Assembly: GCA_965235115.1 (NCBI GenBank)
Contig: OZ249436.1
Location: 10,912,001 to 10,976,000 of the forward strand
Length of the DNA stretch: 64,000 nucleotides
Source of the DNA: Laetmonice hystrix
Taxonomy: Eukaryota
Reading direction: 5' to 3'
The notes below the pieces were generated by a model that saw nothing but the letters and a program-made list of their open reading frames with translations, did not search any database and was not told where the DNA came from. Both the position numbers and the translations under genes were made by a program. The first letter of the stretch is position 1. Every line of letters starts with the position of its first letter. This document shows positions 15,799 through 50,101 of this stretch, one piece after another.

Positions 15799-16659
15799 CT
15801 GGTCACACGACAAACACAGAATAATCAGGTCAATATTCCGGCGTCTGACGTGGCCAAACGTTCTAGTTGTAATACAATTAACGTACCCCACGGCCAGCAG
15901 CCATACAATATTTGTTACACCAACGTTGCCCATCCACGCGCACCCATACACATGGCTATCGGGTATAATAAATCACCACCGCTGGGCAGTCATGGAAGCC
16001 GAACCAAAAATGAGAAAGAATCGTCCGATATTCAGGTGAAAAACAACTTTATCCTGTTCTTATTACAGGACTGCCTATAGAAGTGTCGTTTTCAGTCCAC
16101 AAGTGTTTATTGGATCATGATACGGCATGCGTCAATCGTAATGTATTCGGTGAAATCTACTTCATTACACATCCTCCATATATTGTAGAATTTCTCTCTG
16201 CCGTAAATTTAAGGACTGACAGCAGTGACTAAAGCTGCATGTTTTTTTTAAACGACTTCTGATGATGCATCTCCTGGCCAATGCTGTTTGGGGACATTTC
16301 CCCCATGATTATTGATATCCTTCTCTCGTGCCGTTTTCAACTATAGCAGTGACTCCCTCCAAAGTTAAGTATCAGTTACGGCGTAGTCCACAAACAAATC
16401 TATGAGCTTGCCTTCTGATCATGAGCATGATATTTCCTATTTCCATGTTAAGCGATCTATTCGTGCTTCAACTATTAACTTCTTCTGAGGAGACGGCAGT
16501 CCGAACTGACAGGCATTTCGCTATCTGACTTTATTTAATGCTATTCTATCGACTCCTGAAGGTCGCACCCTTGAAAACGGTTACCATGACCACGGATGTC
16601 CACTTCCACGAGACACCCCCCCCCCTTCCGAAATCCTTGATATACACGTGGATGTAGGT

Positions 16660-17540
16660 GTACACTCATGCCCAGAACCTCTTCCCGTCCCCCCGTCCAA
16701 TATTGTATGTATTATGTACACTCATGTCCAGAACCTCTTCCCGTCCCCCGTCCAATATTGTATGTATTATGTACACTCATGTCCAGAACCTCTTCCCGTC
16801 CCCCGTCCAATATTGTATGTATTATGTACACTCATGTCCAGAACCTCTTCCCGTCCCCCCGTCCAATATTGTGTACACTTATGTCCAGAACCTCTCCCGT
16901 CCCCCCGTCCAATATTGTGTACACTCATGTCCAGAACCTCTCCCGTCCCCCCGTCCAATATTGTATGTATTATGTACACTCATGTCCAGAACCTCTTCCC
17001 GTCCCCCCGTCCAATATTGTATGTATTATGTACACTCATGTCCAGAACCTCTTCCCGTCCCCCCGTCCAATATTGTATGTATTATGTACACTCATGTCCA
17101 GAACCTCTTCCCGTCCCCCCGTCCAATATTGTATGTATTATGTACACTCATGTCCAGAACCTCTTCCCGTCCCCCGTCCAATATTGTATGTATTATGTAC
17201 ACTCATGTCCAGAACCTCTTCCCGTCCCCCGTCCAATATTGTATGTATTATGTACACTCATGTCCAGAACCTCTTCCCGTCCCCCGTCCAATATTGTATG
17301 TATTATGTACACTCATGTCCAGAACCTCTTCCCGTCCCCCCGTCCAATATTGTGTACACTTATGTCCAGAACCTCTTCCCGTCCCCCCGTCCAATATTGT
17401 GTACACTTATGTCCAGAACCTCTTCCCGTCCCCCCGTCCAATATTGTGTACACTTATGTCCAGAACCTCTTCCCGTCCCCCCGTCCAATATTGTGTACAC
17501 TTATGTCCAGAACCTCTTCCCGTCCCCCGTCCAATATTGT
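16660..17540. repeat. minisatellite with 55-56 bp and 46-47 bp variants, about 17 copies
   Basis: Unit GTACACTCATGTCCAGAACCTCTTCCCGTCCCCC(C)GTCCAATATTGT[ATGTATTAT]; explains the three overlapping 294-344 aa ORFs. Confidence 0.95.
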
Positions 17541-18423
17541 AGCGGTTATTGAACAAGAAGATATAAACTGCCCCCTGGCTGCATTGCGAACGATGGGAAG
17601 CATCGTTCGCGGAAGGCTACAAAACATCAGAACGAGTTATTCCAGATTGTATCTCGCTGCAGAGGTTGAGAAATGTGTGTAGTGGGACGACGGCCCAGAC
17701 GCCCATCCCGACGAGAGTTATACTGGCGCTTCGGGTGTGTTTGCCATTATGCTGAGGACTTTGTAAACGACCTAAGTAAGTCCCATCGGCCAAGAAATGA
17801 AGCAGTGTGACATAGCAATTGAGAGTATAATATGCACTGCAGCAGTGGGGGCAACACCAGCAGATGTGCCTCCAACACCTACATTATCGCTACAGAAATT
17901 TGTGGGTGTGGATACTGCCCGGAAAAATAGGTGTCGAAAAAGGAAAGGAGTGGGTGGCCCCCCAAAAAAAACGCCCGAGCATACTTAGGCTACCTTATTC
18001 CCCAAACTGTTGATATATATGGATGGGGAATCTTCTTAGGAGGAGAATGACACCTTGATCAATTGATTCGGTTGAGTAGTTTTGAGTGTAGAGCCTTTTA
18101 TGTAAAGCAAGGTCCAGGGGTTCGAGTGATCAAGTTTAGCGGAAGTGATTTCAATAATCATTAGTTATTGATTTTAAACAAATGGTCTGCACCCCCATGG
18201 AAAACCAACCCTTAGAGCCAGCCTATTATGCACCTGTGATTATGTAATACCTAATCCCTTCTGCCCCTTATTATTGATTATGAGTAAAGGCGATGTTATG
18301 GTTCATTGTTGGACTAACCTGTTGTTTGTCACCTGAAGCAAATTTCATTATGACCTTGCTTCACAAAAATGGCTCCAACACCATAACCACTCATCCGTTT
18401 AGGGTGCTCTTGGTGTCATTCTT

Positions 18424-40071: not shown

Positions 40072-40242
40072 TTAAAGGATCTAGCGCGACTCCTTCGGAG
40101 ATCTATAATGTCACGCAGTTAAATGTTCGAATGTGTTACCGTTCGGTTGATTTACTTTAACTTATTTATTTGTTTATTTATATACCAATTTTGCATAGCA
40201 TAATTGACCACCCTTAATCTCCCGCGTTGTAAATGCACCCAC

Positions 40243-40833
40243 CTGTGGAATGCTGGCAACAGTAGAGATGGTCCACGCTAGTGCCAACATGAGGCGCCCT
40301 CGACGGTCGGCATCATTAAGGCTCAGCGGATGAGTGATGGCAAAGTAACGGTCCAGCGAAATGGTGATTAGAATGGACGACGAAAGATAGAACCCAAAGA
40401 CGCGGAAAAACATGAGCAGACGACAAGCCGTGTCACCAGCCTGCCAGGATACAGTCAAATGCCAAGCAATTTCTAATGGTAGCATGACAAACGTTACAAT
40501 CATGTCCGCTACCGACAGGTGCATGATGAAAAGATTCACACGTGAGCGTCGCCTTCGGTTGCGAAACAAGATAATAAATACAGTCACATTCCCGAAAGCG
40601 GCAAAAACAAAGAGCACCGAATAGAGAATCACCGATATCAGAGTATCGTCCGTGAAAGTTAATTCTCTAGGTATTGAGAGTGTAGCTTCAGTGACTTCAA
40701 GGGATGTTTGGCAAGAAGTGCCAGTTACTCTTAACAAGTCGGTCGTGAAAACCTCCTCGATGCTGTCTCCTCGTCCTGTGCCAACGCCATTTCGAGTGAG
40801 GACAGGAAAACTACCAACATAAGTATTTTCCAT
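40243..40833 (-). CDS. GnRHR: GnRH/AKH/ACP-type neuropeptide GPCR, exon 1 of 6 (N-terminus to TM4)
   Basis: ATG at 40833 in ACAATGG context. Translation has TM1 GN (AAFGNVTV), TM2 HLSVAD, C-RLL (TM3), SLDRY and TM4 LAWTIS-SIPQ. 591 bp ending CAG|GTGGGT, phase 0. Confidence 0.95.
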
Positions 40834-47402: not shown

Positions 47403-47699
47403 ATGGCGTCGCCTGAAGAAGGGCAACTGGCCATTGATGGGGAGGAGTCGCAAGACCACATAGACACTGAGTTGTCACAAGAAGAAGAACATTGTATGTC
47501 TCCACCAGATATCAAAACTGATGTTGAAACTGCTACTGATGCTGACATTCCAACCATTACAACTGTAGAATCTGACCCAGTACCAGATGAGGAACCAGAG
47601 ATTGACCTTGATACGACAGCCTCTGAGCCTGTGCGAATTCAACCACGCATGACATCACTCAGGCTTCAGACTCGTGGAGGAAGGATGCGAGCTGATCAG
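47403..47699 (+). CDS. pogo-DBD chimeric putative transcription factor, coding exon 1 (acidic, low complexity)
   Basis: ATG GCG TCG CCT...; MASPEEGQ...RMRADQ, 297 bp. Donor CAG|GTTAGG, phase 0. Confidence 0.8.
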
Positions 47700-47968
47700 G
47701 TTAGGCAGATCTGGTTTTTTTTGGGATTGTTTTTTTTAAAATCATTTTTTAATTTTTACTTATGAGCCTGCCAAGAGTTTTTATGGTACGGCTCATTAAG
47801 CCATTTCTAACCATGCCAATCTCTGGCCAATCTACAGTACAAAAAGACTCCTTCTGTTCACCAGGAACCAGTGTAATATTGAAGTTATACTTAACAGCAC
47901 AATGTTGTAGTCTTTAACCCAGTTTCATATAATTTAAGTCATTTGTCCTGGGTCGTTATGTTCATCAG

Positions 47969-48144
47969 GATCGTATTAAATCAATTCTGCGGGAGTCCAT
48001 CATCAACATGTGCAACTCGGGACTGTACTACCAGACAGAGATGCGAATAGAGGGATTGCTGGGTATCACTCTAGATAGAAGGGAAGTCATCCTTGTCAAC
48101 GTTCATGACATTGTAAGGACATCAGAATCTGATGATGACTACAG
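47969..48144 (+). CDS. pogo-DBD chimeric putative transcription factor, exon 2 (EGLLGITLD-motif domain)
   Basis: catcag|GAT; DRIKSILRESIINMCNSGLYYQTEMRIEGLLGITLDRREVILVNVHDIVRTSESDDDY. Donor AG|GTAAGG, 176 bp, phase 2. Missed by the ORF track. Confidence 0.85.
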
Positions 48145-48288
48145 GTAAGGACAGCCTCATAAACAAATTTTGTGAACACCAACTTTTATTTGAGCAGATC
48201 CATCCCATAATGATGAAGTGTGGTGAAAATGTTAGAATTTTCAAATTTTAAACAGATTATCATAACATGATACATTTCTCTGCTGCAG

Positions 48289-48670
48289 TACAAAGATTCC
48301 GTACACACCAACTGTTCACAAAAGGAAGATGACTCGTCCATGGAGAGTATCAGGCAGACAGTACTACAAGCGAGGTCCTAGAAGAGCACCAGTAATGGAT
48401 GACGAACCTGCCAGAAAAAAGGCTCGGGCCAGTGAAGATGGTGATGATGATATTGAAATTTTCACAGGAACAAGCAATTTCACCAGCAGAAACAACAATG
48501 AAGAAAACGAGAATGACAATGAAAACTCGCAGGAGAATACTTCAGGAGATCAAGGTTCCATTTCAAACATTGCCCAGGCAGTTGCCTGGTATGCATCTGT
48601 GGACGATGAAGCTAGACTCAGTGATGGCTCCCTTATCAATGATCATGTAAGGGGTCTAGTTGATGAAATG
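48289..48670 (+). CDS. pogo-DBD chimeric putative transcription factor, exon 3 (basic and acidic linker)
   Basis: ctgcag|T ACA completes the phase 2 codon; same frame as ORF 48329; contains EPARKKAR (NLS-like). Donor ATG|GTGAGC, 382 bp. Confidence 0.82.
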
Positions 48671-48943
48671 GTGAGCTGTTCCCCCATTCAGTGTAGTGTT
48701 TGTATATTAGAACTCGCATTTTAACATATTTGTTTATATTAGCTATTTCAATTGATGAGTTTCTAAAGGTATAATCACATTTAACTGAAGAAAGTTTTCC
48801 ATTAATTCTATGGACTAAGAATCATTCTGATAACTAACTGGTGTGGTAATACTTCTCGCCAGTGTATCAGTTGTCAAAGTAAGGTAACCTCAGAGAAGGT
48901 GTTGCTACAGTACAAAAATAAATGGTTTGTTTTTCTGTTGTAG

Positions 48944-50101
48944 GGTTTACCACTGCCTGATCCATTGACAACTCCAGAAAAAGCAGACATGATAAGGTTT
49001 ATCAATGAGCAGGTTGGGCGAGGCTATGCACGCAAGCAGGAGAAAAAGAAAAAAAGGGGAGAGTACAACAACTACACAGCTGAAATGCGGGCAAAGATTG
49101 GACAATATGCTGTAGAGCAGGGAATTGGTAAAGCAATGCGACATTTCAAGAATGTGTTTGGGCGCCCCATCAGTGAGAGCACAGTGCGGTGTATGAGAAA
49201 GGCGTACCTTGATGCCAAGAGGGAGACCCAGGCAGATGAAGTCGTTGTTCTACCGAAGAAAGATCGGGGGCGTCCGCTGATGCTGAAGGAGTACGATGGG
49301 GATGTGATGGAATACATTGATAACTTGCGGCGAAATGGAGCTCAAATTAACGTTCAGATTGTTATGGATGCTGCTCGGGGGGTGCTACTGCACAAAGACA
49401 AGGCAAAGTTGAAGGAATTTGGAGGCACCATCGAAATCACAAAAGCATGGGCCCAGTCCTTCATGGCCAGGAAAGGCTTACATGGGCTGGGACGGCGGCG
49501 ACGCAAGGCAGATGGACCCAAACCACCAAAAAAGAAGAAAAAGGACAATGTCGTCCATGATGCTAATAACCATCCTCAGCATCTCCAGCAGCAGCATCCG
49601 CAACAACCACAGCATCCTCAGCAACATCAACCTCAGCCCCTACAAGGACCCCAGCAAACACAGCAGCAGCAGCAGCAGCAGCAACAACCTCCACATCAAA
49701 CTCAGTCACTGTCCCAACACCCAACACCTGTCCACACACCTCACCCTCAGGATCACGAACAACACCTACACAACCTCGACGTGTGTACGCCACCTCCGGC
49801 CCACGACCAGCAACGTAACAATACCATGGTGTTTCCAGAGAGACAGATGCACCATGATCCCATGCATGACCACCGTAACACGATGGTTTTCCCTGACCGA
49901 GGTCAGCCACATCCAACCGACCACCATGGCATGCACGACCACAACTCCCGTATGGTGTTCCCTGAGAGACATCCCATGACAGGGGCACCAATGCAGGACC
50001 CTCACCACATGTTTTTTCCAGAAAGACTAAATTTGAATCCAGTACCAGCAGCACACTGTTCACTCTGGCCGTCACAAAACCTGCACCACAAAAACAACTG
50101 A
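48944..50101 (+). CDS. pogo-DBD chimeric putative transcription factor, exon 4: pogo/Tigger-type bipartite HTH plus Gln/His/Pro-rich tail
   Basis: ttgtag|GGT. KRGEYNNYTAEMRAKIGQYA..A.RHF..SESTVR (first HTH), RGRPL linker, YI..LR..G..IN..IV..AARG..GG.I.ITKAWAQSF..R (CENP-B/Tc5-type HTH). No DDE domain follows; instead KKKKK, polyQ and a His-rich tail, stop at 50099-50101. Total CDS 2013 bp = 670 aa. Confidence 0.88.
   Translation, partial: GLPLPDPLTTPEKADMIRFINEQVGRGYARKQEKKKKRGEYNNYTAEMRAKIGQYAVEQGIGKAMRHFKNVFGRPISESTVRCMRKAYLDAKRETQADEVVVLPKKDRGRPLMLKEYDGDVMEYIDNLRRNGAQINVQIVMDAARGVLLHKDKAKLKEFGGTIEITKAWAQSFMARKGLHGLGRRRRKADGPKPPKKKKKDNVVHDANNHPQHLQQQHPQQPQHPQQHQPQPLQGPQQTQQQQQQQQQPPHQTQSLSQHPTPVHTPHPQDHEQHLHNLDVCTPPPAHDQQRNNTMVFPERQMHHDPMHDHRNTMVFPDRGQPHPTDHHGMHDHNSRMVFPERHPMTGAPMQDPHHMFFPERLNLNPVPAAHCSLWPSQNLHHKNN

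What the first reader, a model, noticed from the sequence alone, without database searches (positions are those of the whole stretch)
47403..50101. Candidate domesticated pogo-transposase transcription factor (DBD captured as a terminal exon, catalytic domain lost)
Seen: a four-exon 670-aa reading frame with consistent splice phases. The last exon encodes two tandem HTH modules joined by an RGRPL linker (about 49052-49490). Established: this bipartite layout is the DNA-binding half of pogo/Tigger (CENP-B-like) transposases, where it is normally followed by a DDE_1 domain. Seen: here it runs into a basic NLS-like stretch (RRRRK..KKKKK) and a Gln/His/Pro tail. No DDE domain or TIRs are visible, and it is spliced to three host-type exons. 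Inference: exon capture built a new sequence-specific regulator, analogous to CENP-B/JRK/POGK-type domestications but with a different partner domain. It could bind leftover TIRs of its ancestral transposon across the genome. I know of no described gene with this architecture.
Basis: partly seen in the sequence, partly recalled or inferred. Interest (0 to 1): 0.85.

Follow-up and report, generated by a model that had tools for sequence, protein, structure and literature searches.

The report
Old transposase DNA-binder fused to host gene
This single-copy animal gene joins a small host domain, otherwise found at the front of zinc-finger proteins, to the DNA-binding half of an ancient pogo-type jumping-gene enzyme; it is a new, unnamed example of a well-known way in which new DNA-binding regulators arise.

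Summary
Four exons (47403-47699, 47969-48144, 48289-48670, 48944-50101) have GT..AG borders and matching phases, and give a 670-aa frame.

- **The DNA-binding part.** The first ~180 aa of exon 4 fold as a CENP-B-type two-part helix-turn-helix domain. They are 40-46% identical to the N-termini of proteins that continue into a DDE_1 (pogo-type) catalytic domain. Here that domain, any remnant of it, and inverted repeats are all absent.
- **Copy number and constraint.** The exon is single-copy in the 627-Mb genome. It has orthologue-like relatives in at least three deeply diverged lineages. In the closest pair compared, the DNA-binding part has pN 0.02 against saturated pS 0.80.
- **Evidence for splicing.** The splice acceptor just before the transposase-derived part is kept in the relatives. 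One relative has a continuous, mRNA-like contig that joins both halves.
- **The host part.** Exon 2 is a ~50-aa helix plus beta-hairpin domain with no Pfam model. Elsewhere it heads C2H2 zinc-finger proteins of annelids and molluscs. This genome has at least 49 such exons, 36 of them on this chromosome.

So this is a conserved host-transposase fusion gene, analogous to POGK or KRABINER but with a different, undescribed partner domain. Splicing in this species, DNA binding and a regulatory role remain untested. Binding to leftover transposon ends is unlikely, because no close transposon relative remains in the genome.

The parts
47403..47699 (+). Predicted exon 1: ATG plus 99 codons, acidic (26 D/E against 7 K/R), donor CAG|gttagg. 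Not conserved in relatives; the least certain part of the model.
   Evidence: Open frame and splice signals. An upstream exon is needed because exon 2 has no in-frame ATG before the conserved domain (reading). No variant among the three runs' contigs falls in this exon.
47969..48144 (+). Exon 2: host N-domain of about 50 aa with the core motif EGLLGITLD. It is predicted as one helix plus a beta hairpin. The same domain heads C2H2 zinc-finger proteins of annelids and molluscs.
   Evidence: 15 invariant columns across 5 sequences. AF2 model pLDDT 76, H2-18 E24-35 E39-50. AFDB cluster matches at 27-35% identity, probability 1.00, to the N-termini of C2H2 proteins. Atlas matches to annelid and mollusc clusters with zf-C2H2. 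At least 49 such exons in the own genome. No Pfam match.
48289..48670 (+). Exon 3: low-complexity linker with a basic stretch (KRGPRRAP..ARKKAR) followed by an acidic and Asn-rich stretch.
   Evidence: Translation and composition. Only a chance-level Pfam match (E 0.25). Relatives have non-alignable linkers of similar character.
48944..49033 (+). Start of exon 4: LPLPDP motif and a first helix (aa 11-30 of the exon). Both are shared with the N-termini of DDE_1 transposase-like proteins. The acceptor lies directly upstream.
   Evidence: Alignment A1. The acceptor is at the same place, within one to seven codons, in L002, L014, L003 and L005.
49079..49228 (+). First helix-turn-helix subdomain (three helices, exon-4 aa 46-95).
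   Evidence: AF2 model pLDDT 90-98 over this stretch. Aligns to CENP-B(1-129) and to the SETMAR and Brinker DNA-binding domains.
49265..49279 (+). RGRPL linker between the two subdomains, AT-hook-like. G is invariant and R and P nearly invariant across the family.
   Evidence: Invariant and near-invariant columns R108, G109, P111 in A1. A minor-groove role is inferred from Tc1/mariner-type transposase linkers (general knowledge).
49286..49471 (+). Second helix-turn-helix subdomain (Tc5/CENP-B type, exon-4 aa 115-176), ending in the WAQSF..R motif.
   Evidence: Weak Pfam HTH_Tnp_Tc5 match, E 0.097, 13.1 bits against a cut-off of 22.2. AF2 model. CENP-B match at Z 7.7 spans model residues 40-178.
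49493..49543 (+). Two basic runs (RRRRK, KKKKK), a candidate nuclear localisation signal. They sit where related transposases continue into DDE_1.
   Evidence: Motif scan. Transposase matches stop at about 49480-49528.
49544..50101 (+). Gln/His/Pro-rich tail with four [MF][VF]FP[ED]R repeats (aa 580-646), then the stop codon. Lineage-specific and probably disordered.
   Evidence: Composition and repeats. Only the CAG/CAA part has DNA look-alikes elsewhere in the genome. Tails of relatives diverge fast: pN 0.18 against 0.02 in the DNA-binding part.

Best explanation
The locus is a real, single-copy, conserved host-transposase fusion gene. An ancestral gene of a family carrying a small N-terminal helix-plus-hairpin domain, which is normally followed by C2H2 zinc fingers, acquired the 5' part of a pogo-type (DDE_1) transposase gene as its last exon. 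The acquisition used a splice acceptor near the start of the transposase reading frame. The catalytic half and the transposon ends were lost. The product is most likely a nuclear protein that binds a bipartite DNA site through two helix-turn-helix subdomains joined by an AT-hook-like RGRP linker. It would bring to that site whatever the N-domain does in its zinc-finger paralogues (recruiting a cofactor or self-association), together with a Q/H/P-rich disordered tail. Shown here: the gene structure, the transposase origin of the DNA-binding part, its single-copy status, its conservation and purifying selection, the host nature of exon 2, and a spliced transcript in a relative. Inferred: splicing in this species, nuclear location, sequence-specific DNA binding, and a role in transcription.
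For: - **Gene model.** Splice sites are canonical and phases fit.
- **Fold.** In a search of 48,161 PDB chains the best match is CENP-B(1-129) bound to DNA, Z 7.7 across both subdomains (Foldseek probability 0.90). Swiss-Prot fold matches are POGK, CENP-B, JRK, TIGD2-6, Cbh1/2 and Abp1.
- **Transposase origin.** Pfam DDE_1 follows it in P0030, P0047, P0057 and P0064. The best Atlas shape match is a cluster with DDE_1 in 98% of members.
- **Single copy.** One protein-level match in the genome. At DNA level only the poly-Q part repeats. Transposase P0047 matches this exon over its aa 15-206 only.
- **One origin.** The DNA-binding parts of the window and 10 relatives form one clade (SH-aLRT 98) among transposase-linked sequences. 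Their N-domains also separate from the genome's paralogues (SH-aLRT 99).
- **Selection.** P0002 against P0004: pN 0.020 with pS 0.80 in the DNA-binding part, and pN 0.18 in the tail.
- **Linkage and splicing.** The N-domain exon lies upstream of the DNA-binding exon in L002 and L005. L006 is continuous across four exon pieces that are split in L005, and ends just after an AATAAA. The acceptor position is conserved.
- **Host nature of exon 2.**
Against: - No RNA data exist for this species, so no junction is observed directly.
- Exon 1 is not conserved.
- Pfam does not recognise the DNA-binding part above threshold (13.1 against 22.2 bits).
- The taxa of the orthologue-bearing contigs are unknown, so the age of the fusion is judged only from saturated synonymous sites.
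- DNA binding and any effect on transcription are untested.
- The one DDE_1 relative whose contig was read shows no inverted repeats, so mobility of the source family was not demonstrated here.
- The N-domain self-association test gave no verdict.
Confidence: 0.75

Rival explanations
1. The gene is real and conserved, but it is not a classical gene-specific transcription factor. Like CENP-B, the fission-yeast Cbh/Abp1 proteins or some other pogo-derived proteins, it would act on chromatin, repeats, centromeres or transposon control. Alternatively, the helix-turn-helix part now serves mainly for protein contacts.
For: The closest structural relatives include CENP-B, Abp1 and Cbh1/2, which are not promoter-specific regulators. 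No target sites are known. The DNA-binding part is far more constrained than the rest, which fits any conserved binding role.
Against: Its partner domain is otherwise attached to C2H2 zinc-finger arrays, the usual make-up of gene regulators. The RGRP linker and a basic surface are kept: 36 K/R against 23 D/E.
Confidence: 0.17
2. The gene model is wrong in part. Exon 1, or exons 1-3, would not belong to the same transcript as exon 4 in this species, and the DNA-binding exon would be expressed from its own start (for example the Met 15 codons into exon 4).
For: There is no RNA evidence here. Exon 1 has no counterpart in relatives, whose frames start right before the N-domain.
Against: Residues upstream of that Met (LPLPDP..PEKA) are conserved with orthologues and transposases and are preceded by a conserved acceptor. 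The N-domain and the DNA-binding exons are linked in L002 and L005 and joined in L006. Both halves give matching clades.
Confidence: 0.05
3. Exon 4 is an ordinary decaying transposon fragment that happens to lie next to host exons.
For: It is homologous to transposase N-termini.
Against: It is single-copy, with no DDE remnant or TIRs. The frame of 385 codons is intact. pN is 0.02 against saturated pS in relatives. The intron position is conserved. No variant among the three runs' contigs falls in the DNA-binding part, and variants are fewer in exons (5 in 2013 nt) than in non-coding DNA (10 in 1088 nt; p 0.014).
Confidence: 0.03

Closest known systems
POGK (pogo transposable element with KRAB domain) and KRAB-transposase fusions such as KRABINER (Cosby et al., bioRxiv 10.1101/2020.05.07.082677)
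   Same: An N-terminal domain typical of zinc-finger genes is joined by splicing to a Tc1/mariner/pogo-type transposase DNA-binding domain encoded in a separate downstream exon. The acceptor lies near the start of the transposase frame, as in 8 of 9 cases traced in that paper. POGK is the best Swiss-Prot fold match.
   Different: The partner is not KRAB but an unnamed helix-plus-hairpin domain of annelid and mollusc zinc-finger genes. POGK and KRABINER keep the catalytic-domain region, whereas this gene has none. Sequence identity to POGK is only 18-20%, which points to a separate capture. The lineage is an invertebrate one.
CENP-B, JRK/JRKL, TIGD1-7, and fission-yeast Abp1/Cbh1/Cbh2 (domesticated pogo transposases; PMC7386202)
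   Same: They share the bipartite CENP-B-type helix-turn-helix DNA-binding fold and an origin from DDE_1 elements.
   Different: Those are whole-transposase domestications that keep a DDE_1-derived domain and have no added host domain. Here only the DNA-binding half survives, and it is fused to host exons.
DNA-binding-module-only domestications of Tc1/mariner elements (Drosophila cag, CG4570, toy/Pax paired domain; PMC13548663)
   Same: Only the DNA-binding module of the transposase is kept, under purifying selection. In toy it is fused to another domain.
   Different: The source family differs (pogo/DDE_1-linked block), as do the partner domain and the animal lineage.
TE-derived 'CENPB' and 'HTH-Psq' transcription-factor candidates catalogued across Metazoa (PMC10027918)
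   Same: That survey lists pogo-derived DNA-binding proteins in lophotrochozoans, so this gene falls in a class already noted at domain level.
   Different: The survey reports lineage-specific genes without homologues in other classes or phyla. This gene has orthologue-like relatives in at least three deeply diverged lineages. Its DNA-binding part falls below Pfam thresholds, so it may have escaped domain-based screens. Whether it is in their list was not checked.

Membership tests
pogo-type (DDE_1) transposase-derived, CENP-B-type DNA-binding domain | Two three-helix HTH subdomains in tandem with a CENP-B-like arrangement | tested here: met
   AF2 model pLDDT 87. 1hlv (CENP-B 1-129) is the top match at Z 7.7 over model residues 40-178. 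POGK, CENPB, JRK and TIGD proteins lead the Swiss-Prot fold matches.
pogo-type (DDE_1) transposase-derived, CENP-B-type DNA-binding domain | Pfam HTH_Tnp_Tc5, CENP-B_N or HTH_psq above the gathering score | tested here: not met
   HTH_Tnp_Tc5 scores 13.1 bits against a cut-off of 22.2, E 0.097; the other models give no match. Language-model features do point to HTH_Tnp_Tc5 clusters, score 0.92.
pogo-type (DDE_1) transposase-derived, CENP-B-type DNA-binding domain | Sequence relatives in which the same block is followed directly by a DDE_1 catalytic domain | tested here: met
   P0030, P0047, P0057 and P0064 are 42-47% identical by tblastn (41, 42, 36 and 38% in alignment A1) at phmmer E 1e-28 to 1e-36, and carry Pfam DDE_1 downstream.
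Active or decaying pogo transposon | DDE_1 catalytic domain, terminal inverted repeats, multiple copies | tested here: not met
   No DDE similarity anywhere in the window. No credible inverted repeats. Single copy in 627 Mb.
Host-transposase fusion gene (sensu Cosby et al.) | The transposase-derived domain and a host domain are encoded by different exons of one reading frame | tested here: met
   Exon 2 is the host N-domain and exon 4 the transposase part, with fitting phases. The N-domain is otherwise found with C2H2 fingers.
Host-transposase fusion gene (sensu Cosby et al.) | A spliced transcript joining the host and transposase exons | tested here: inconclusive
   This species has no RNA run, and the runs that hold the stretch are unspliced DNA contigs. 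In a relative, contig L006 is continuous across exon pieces that are split in genomic L005, and ends after an AATAAA.
Host-transposase fusion gene (sensu Cosby et al.) | Orthologues under purifying selection | tested here: met
   Clade of 11 sequences, SH-aLRT 98. DNA-binding part pN 0.020 against pS 0.80, and 0.078 against 0.81 in a second pair.
Sequence-specific transcription factor | Binds a defined DNA motif and changes transcription | not testable with these tools
   Needs SELEX, DAP-seq, ChIP and reporter assays.
Vertebrate CENP-B/JRK/TIGD/POGK gene families | Orthology, or close sequence kinship, and a retained DDE_1-derived domain | tested here: not met
   Only 14-20% identity in structural alignments. 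No PDB sequence match apart from chance-level ones. No DDE_1.

The most novel reading that the evidence does not exclude
Exon 2 would represent an undescribed zinc-finger-associated N-terminal domain of spiralian animals, a counterpart of KRAB, SCAN or ZAD. It has at least 49 genes here, 36 of them on one chromosome. This gene would be an ancient fusion of that domain with a pogo-type DNA-binding module, kept in several deeply diverged lineages. That would show transposase capture building regulators outside vertebrates by the same route, an acceptor at the start of the transposase frame, long before the vertebrate cases.
Probability: 0.5. Interest if true: 0.6.

Novelty: new member of a known kind. 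Interest (0 to 1): 0.45.

Why it matters
Host-transposase fusion genes are a documented source of new vertebrate regulators. Well-supported invertebrate cases that are old and conserved are few. This locus offers such a case, with clear anatomy: the host domain, the transposase DNA-binding module, the lost catalytic half and a conserved intron at the junction.

It also points to an unannotated domain family that heads many zinc-finger genes in annelid- and mollusc-type genomes. That family may be the functional counterpart of KRAB or ZAD in these animals. Both points can be tested with standard assays.

Tried and rejected
- **RNA evidence.** No RNA run holds the stretch. The three runs that hold it are DNA contigs from one sample and show no joints.
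- **N-domain self-association.** Complex prediction with two copies gave no verdict: score 0.00, own fold pLDDT about 35, and the alignment was not used. This counts neither for nor against binding.
- **Sequence search of solved structures with the DNA-binding part.** Only chance-level matches.
- **Pfam on exons 1-3.** Nothing usable; a CENP-B_dimeris match at E 0.25 reflects acidic low complexity.
- **Atlas feature search with the N-domain of P0005.** No usable hit.
- **Synteny with the upstream receptor gene.** No match within the 6-10 kb flanks of the orthologue contigs, so it remains untested.
- **Inverted repeats around a DDE_1 relative (L031).** None in a 2.2-kb contig, which may simply be cut short.
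- **P0158 (L013).** It has a fusion-type N-domain but no DNA-binding exon within 10 kb downstream. Whether that gene is complete is unknown.
- **C2H2 finger remnants in the window.** None found.
- **Names for relatives.** The cluster look-ups gave no usable name.
- **Text search of papers for the motif EGLLGIT.** No paper.
- **Rejected reading: binding to leftover TIRs of the ancestral element.** No close relative of the source transposon survives in this genome.
Full report
**1. The observation**

The region was read and translated. Four segments join into one frame of 2013 nt, 670 codons plus a stop:

| Exon | Coordinates |
|---|---|
| 1 | 47403-47699 |
| 2 | 47969-48144 |
| 3 | 48289-48670 |
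| 4 | 48944-50101 |

Each intron begins with GT and ends with a pyrimidine run and AG. The phases fit. Exon 2 has no in-frame ATG before its conserved part, and a stop lies at 47930, so an upstream coding exon is required. Exon 1 is the obvious candidate but has no counterpart in relatives.

Exon 4 carries the RGRPL motif at 49265-49279 and the basic runs RRRRK and KKKKK at 49493-49543. Its tail is Gln/His/Pro-rich, with four [MF][VF]FP[ED]R repeats. The description is accurate.

**2. What exon 4 is**

Pfam gives only a sub-threshold HTH_Tnp_Tc5 match: E 0.097, 13.1 bits against a cut-off of 22.2. An exhaustive phmmer search of 1.84 billion representatives with exon-4 aa 1-192 finds 1811 relatives at E<=0.001 and 46 at E<=1e-30.

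Several relatives (P0030, P0047, P0057, P0064) are 42-47% identical by tblastn, or 36-42% in alignment A1. All four carry Pfam DDE_1 directly after the block.

The shared block starts at an LPxP motif close to the transposase N-terminus. It includes an invariant G and near-invariant R and P in the RGRP linker.

An AlphaFold model built on this alignment has mean pLDDT 87. It shows a leading helix and two three-helix bundles. The structural matches are:

- In a search of 48,161 PDB chains, the best match is CENP-B(1-129) on its DNA, Z 7.7 across both bundles. The SETMAR, Mos1 and Brinker DNA-binding domains follow lower down.
- Foldseek also ranks CENP-B first, probability 0.90.
- Against Swiss-Prot models the matches are POGK, CENP-B, JRK, TIGD2-6, Cbh1/2, Abp1 and PDC2.
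- The best ESM Atlas shape match is a cluster with DDE_1 in 98% of members.
- Language-model features point to HTH_Tnp_Tc5 clusters.

The first ~180 aa of exon 4 are therefore the DNA-binding half of a pogo-type transposase.

**3. It is not a transposon copy**

- tblastn with four DDE_1 relatives finds nothing in the 64-kb window except the DNA-binding block.
- Inverted repeats near the gene are 14-22 nt and imperfect, as expected by chance.
- In the 627-Mb genome the block has one protein-level match, even at E<=10.
- At DNA level only the CAG/CAA run of the tail has look-alikes.
- The transposase P0047 has its best match in this genome on this exon, over its residues 15-206 only. Other DDE_1 elements in the genome are 25-29% identical.

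**4. Conservation**

Ten proteins from other assemblies are 54-64% identical over the block, and P0005 also shares the exon-2 domain. In a tree of 144 DNA-binding segments, the window and these ten form one clade (SH-aLRT 98). That clade sits among DDE-linked sequences. Proteins with three or four tandem copies of the block form a separate clade.

Codon comparisons:

| Pair | Region | pN | pS |
|---|---|---|---|
| P0002 / P0004 | DNA-binding part | 0.020 | 0.80 (saturated) |
| P0002 / P0004 | Tail | 0.18 | 0.74 |
| P0006 / P0005 | DNA-binding part | 0.078 | 0.81 |

This is strong purifying selection on the DNA-binding part. It also shows that even the closest pair is anciently diverged.

Contigs of three runs from one sample differ from the window at 5 sites in 2013 exonic nt. 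Three are synonymous and two are conservative changes in the tail; none is in the DNA-binding part. In 1088 non-coding nt they differ at 10 sites (8 single-letter changes and 2 indels); Fisher p = 0.014.

**5. Are the exons one gene?**

No RNA run exists for this organism, so the evidence is indirect but consistent:

- The exon-2 homologue lies 2-7 kb upstream of the DNA-binding exon, on the same strand, in L002 and L005.
- Contig L006 (4.1 kb) carries one continuous 593-aa frame. Its parts are split into four exon-like pieces with GT/AG borders in genomic contig L005 of a close relative, including an intron inside EGL|LGIT. L006 ends 10 nt after an AATAAA. It is therefore best read as a spliced mRNA.
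- The acceptor directly before LPLPDP is present in the window, L002, L014, L003 and L005, within one to seven codons.
- The N-domains of the fusion genes (window, P0005, L002, and also P0158) separate from the genome's paralogues with SH-aLRT 99. This mirrors the DNA-binding clade and argues for a single fusion event followed by joint descent.

**6. The partner domain**

Exon 2 encodes a ~50-aa unit with 15 invariant positions in five sequences and the core motif EGLLGITLD. It is predicted as one helix plus a beta hairpin, pLDDT 76. Pfam has no model for it.

- In AlphaFold DB clusters it matches the N-terminal 50-55 residues of proteins named 'C2H2-type domain-containing protein'. Identity is 27-35%, TM by query 0.72-0.81, probability 1.00. 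From memory, the accessions belong to Capitella, Helobdella and Dimorphilus.
- In the ESM Atlas it matches annelid and mollusc clusters, two of which carry zf-C2H2.
- The own genome holds at least 49 such exons, 36 of them on chromosome C1, which is 12% of the genome.
- In L028 the N-domain exon is followed 200 bp downstream by an exon with four C2H2 fingers. L026 also has finger-bearing frames downstream.

The partner is therefore a host domain that normally heads zinc-finger genes. This makes the gene a close analogue of KRAB-transposase fusions. The window itself has no C2H2 motif.

That agrees with these matches, but I did not establish the taxon.

**7. Mechanism**

Shown:

- the anatomy of the gene;
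- the origin of the DNA-binding part;
- loss of the catalytic half;
- conservation.

Inferred:

- The protein enters the nucleus through its basic runs.
- It binds a bipartite site through two helix-turn-helix units, with the RGRP linker in the minor groove, as in Tc1/mariner/pogo transposases and CENP-B.
- It acts through its N-domain and its Q/H/P-rich tail.

What the N-domain does is unknown. A two-copy complex prediction gave no verdict.

The source family has no close member left in this genome, and the fusion is old.

**8. Comparison with what is known**

Transposase capture by splicing, mostly of DNA-binding domains and often onto KRAB, is documented for at least 94 tetrapod events. The acceptor usually lies just upstream of the transposase frame (bioRxiv 10.1101/2020.05.07.082677). 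DNA-binding-module-only domestication is described in Drosophila (PMC13548663). Pogo-derived 'CENPB' and 'HTH-Psq' candidates have been catalogued in lophotrochozoans, there as lineage-specific genes (PMC10027918).

This gene fits that kind. Three things are new:

- the specific family, whose relatives carry no usable name in the databases;
- the unnamed partner domain;
- deep conservation in an invertebrate lineage.

I rate it a new member of a known kind, of moderate interest.

**9. Limits**

- The taxa of all related contigs are unknown.
- L006's status as mRNA is inferred.
- Exon 1 is unverified.
- Mobility of the DDE_1 relatives was not shown.
- Whether the gene appears in published catalogues was not checked.

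Noticed in passing
G000 chromosome C1 and others; e.g. L017, L018-L025, L026-L028 (own genome): A gene family of at least 49 exons encodes the helix-plus-hairpin N-domain (consensus ..ALLTEAI.VLCKNGL.Y...F.IEGLLGITLD.EDVFLVNIKET.). Of these, 36 lie on chromosome C1, which is 12% of the genome. Some are followed by C2H2 finger exons. No Pfam model covers the domain. It may be an undescribed zinc-finger-associated domain.
   Followed up: partly
Proteins P0012-P0055 (e.g. P0013, 2071 aa; P0019, 1668 aa): A separate clade of proteins carries three or four tandem copies of the same bipartite DNA-binding block at the C-terminus. Both long members scanned (P0013, P0019) have an Integrase_H2C2 zinc-binding domain near the N-terminus. 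Whether these are mobile-element proteins or another domestication is unknown.
   Followed up: partly
window 40174-40830, minus strand: First large exon of a rhodopsin-type receptor, Pfam 7tm_1 at E 2.4e-29. The best solved relatives are the GnRH receptor (E 1.6e-30) and the vasopressin V1a receptor (E 2.1e-29). It lies head-to-head with the fusion gene, about 6.5 kb from exon 1.
   Followed up: partly
window 49544-50098 (aa 580-646 of the model): Four repeats of [MF][VF]FP[ED]R occur at spacings of about 20 aa in the His/Pro-rich tail. They are not seen in the tails of relatives.
   Followed up: no
L003, L004, L005 (one ENA sample, three contigs of 177-298 kb): The same 354-aa product (P0006) is encoded on three long contigs with partly different flanks and similar depth (25-34x). 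These could be haplotypes, recent duplicates or a polyploid host.
   Followed up: no
window 16648-17682, plus strand: Three overlapping open frames of 294-344 codons run in all three phases over the same 1 kb. This suggests a stop-free low-complexity or repeat stretch. Pfam gives only a sub-threshold match (TMEM218_N, 20.8 bits against a cut-off of 27).
   Followed up: no
window 47794 and 47815 (intron 1): Contigs of run X2 carry a 5-nt insertion and an 11-nt deletion in intron 1. All indels seen among the runs lie in introns.
   Followed up: no
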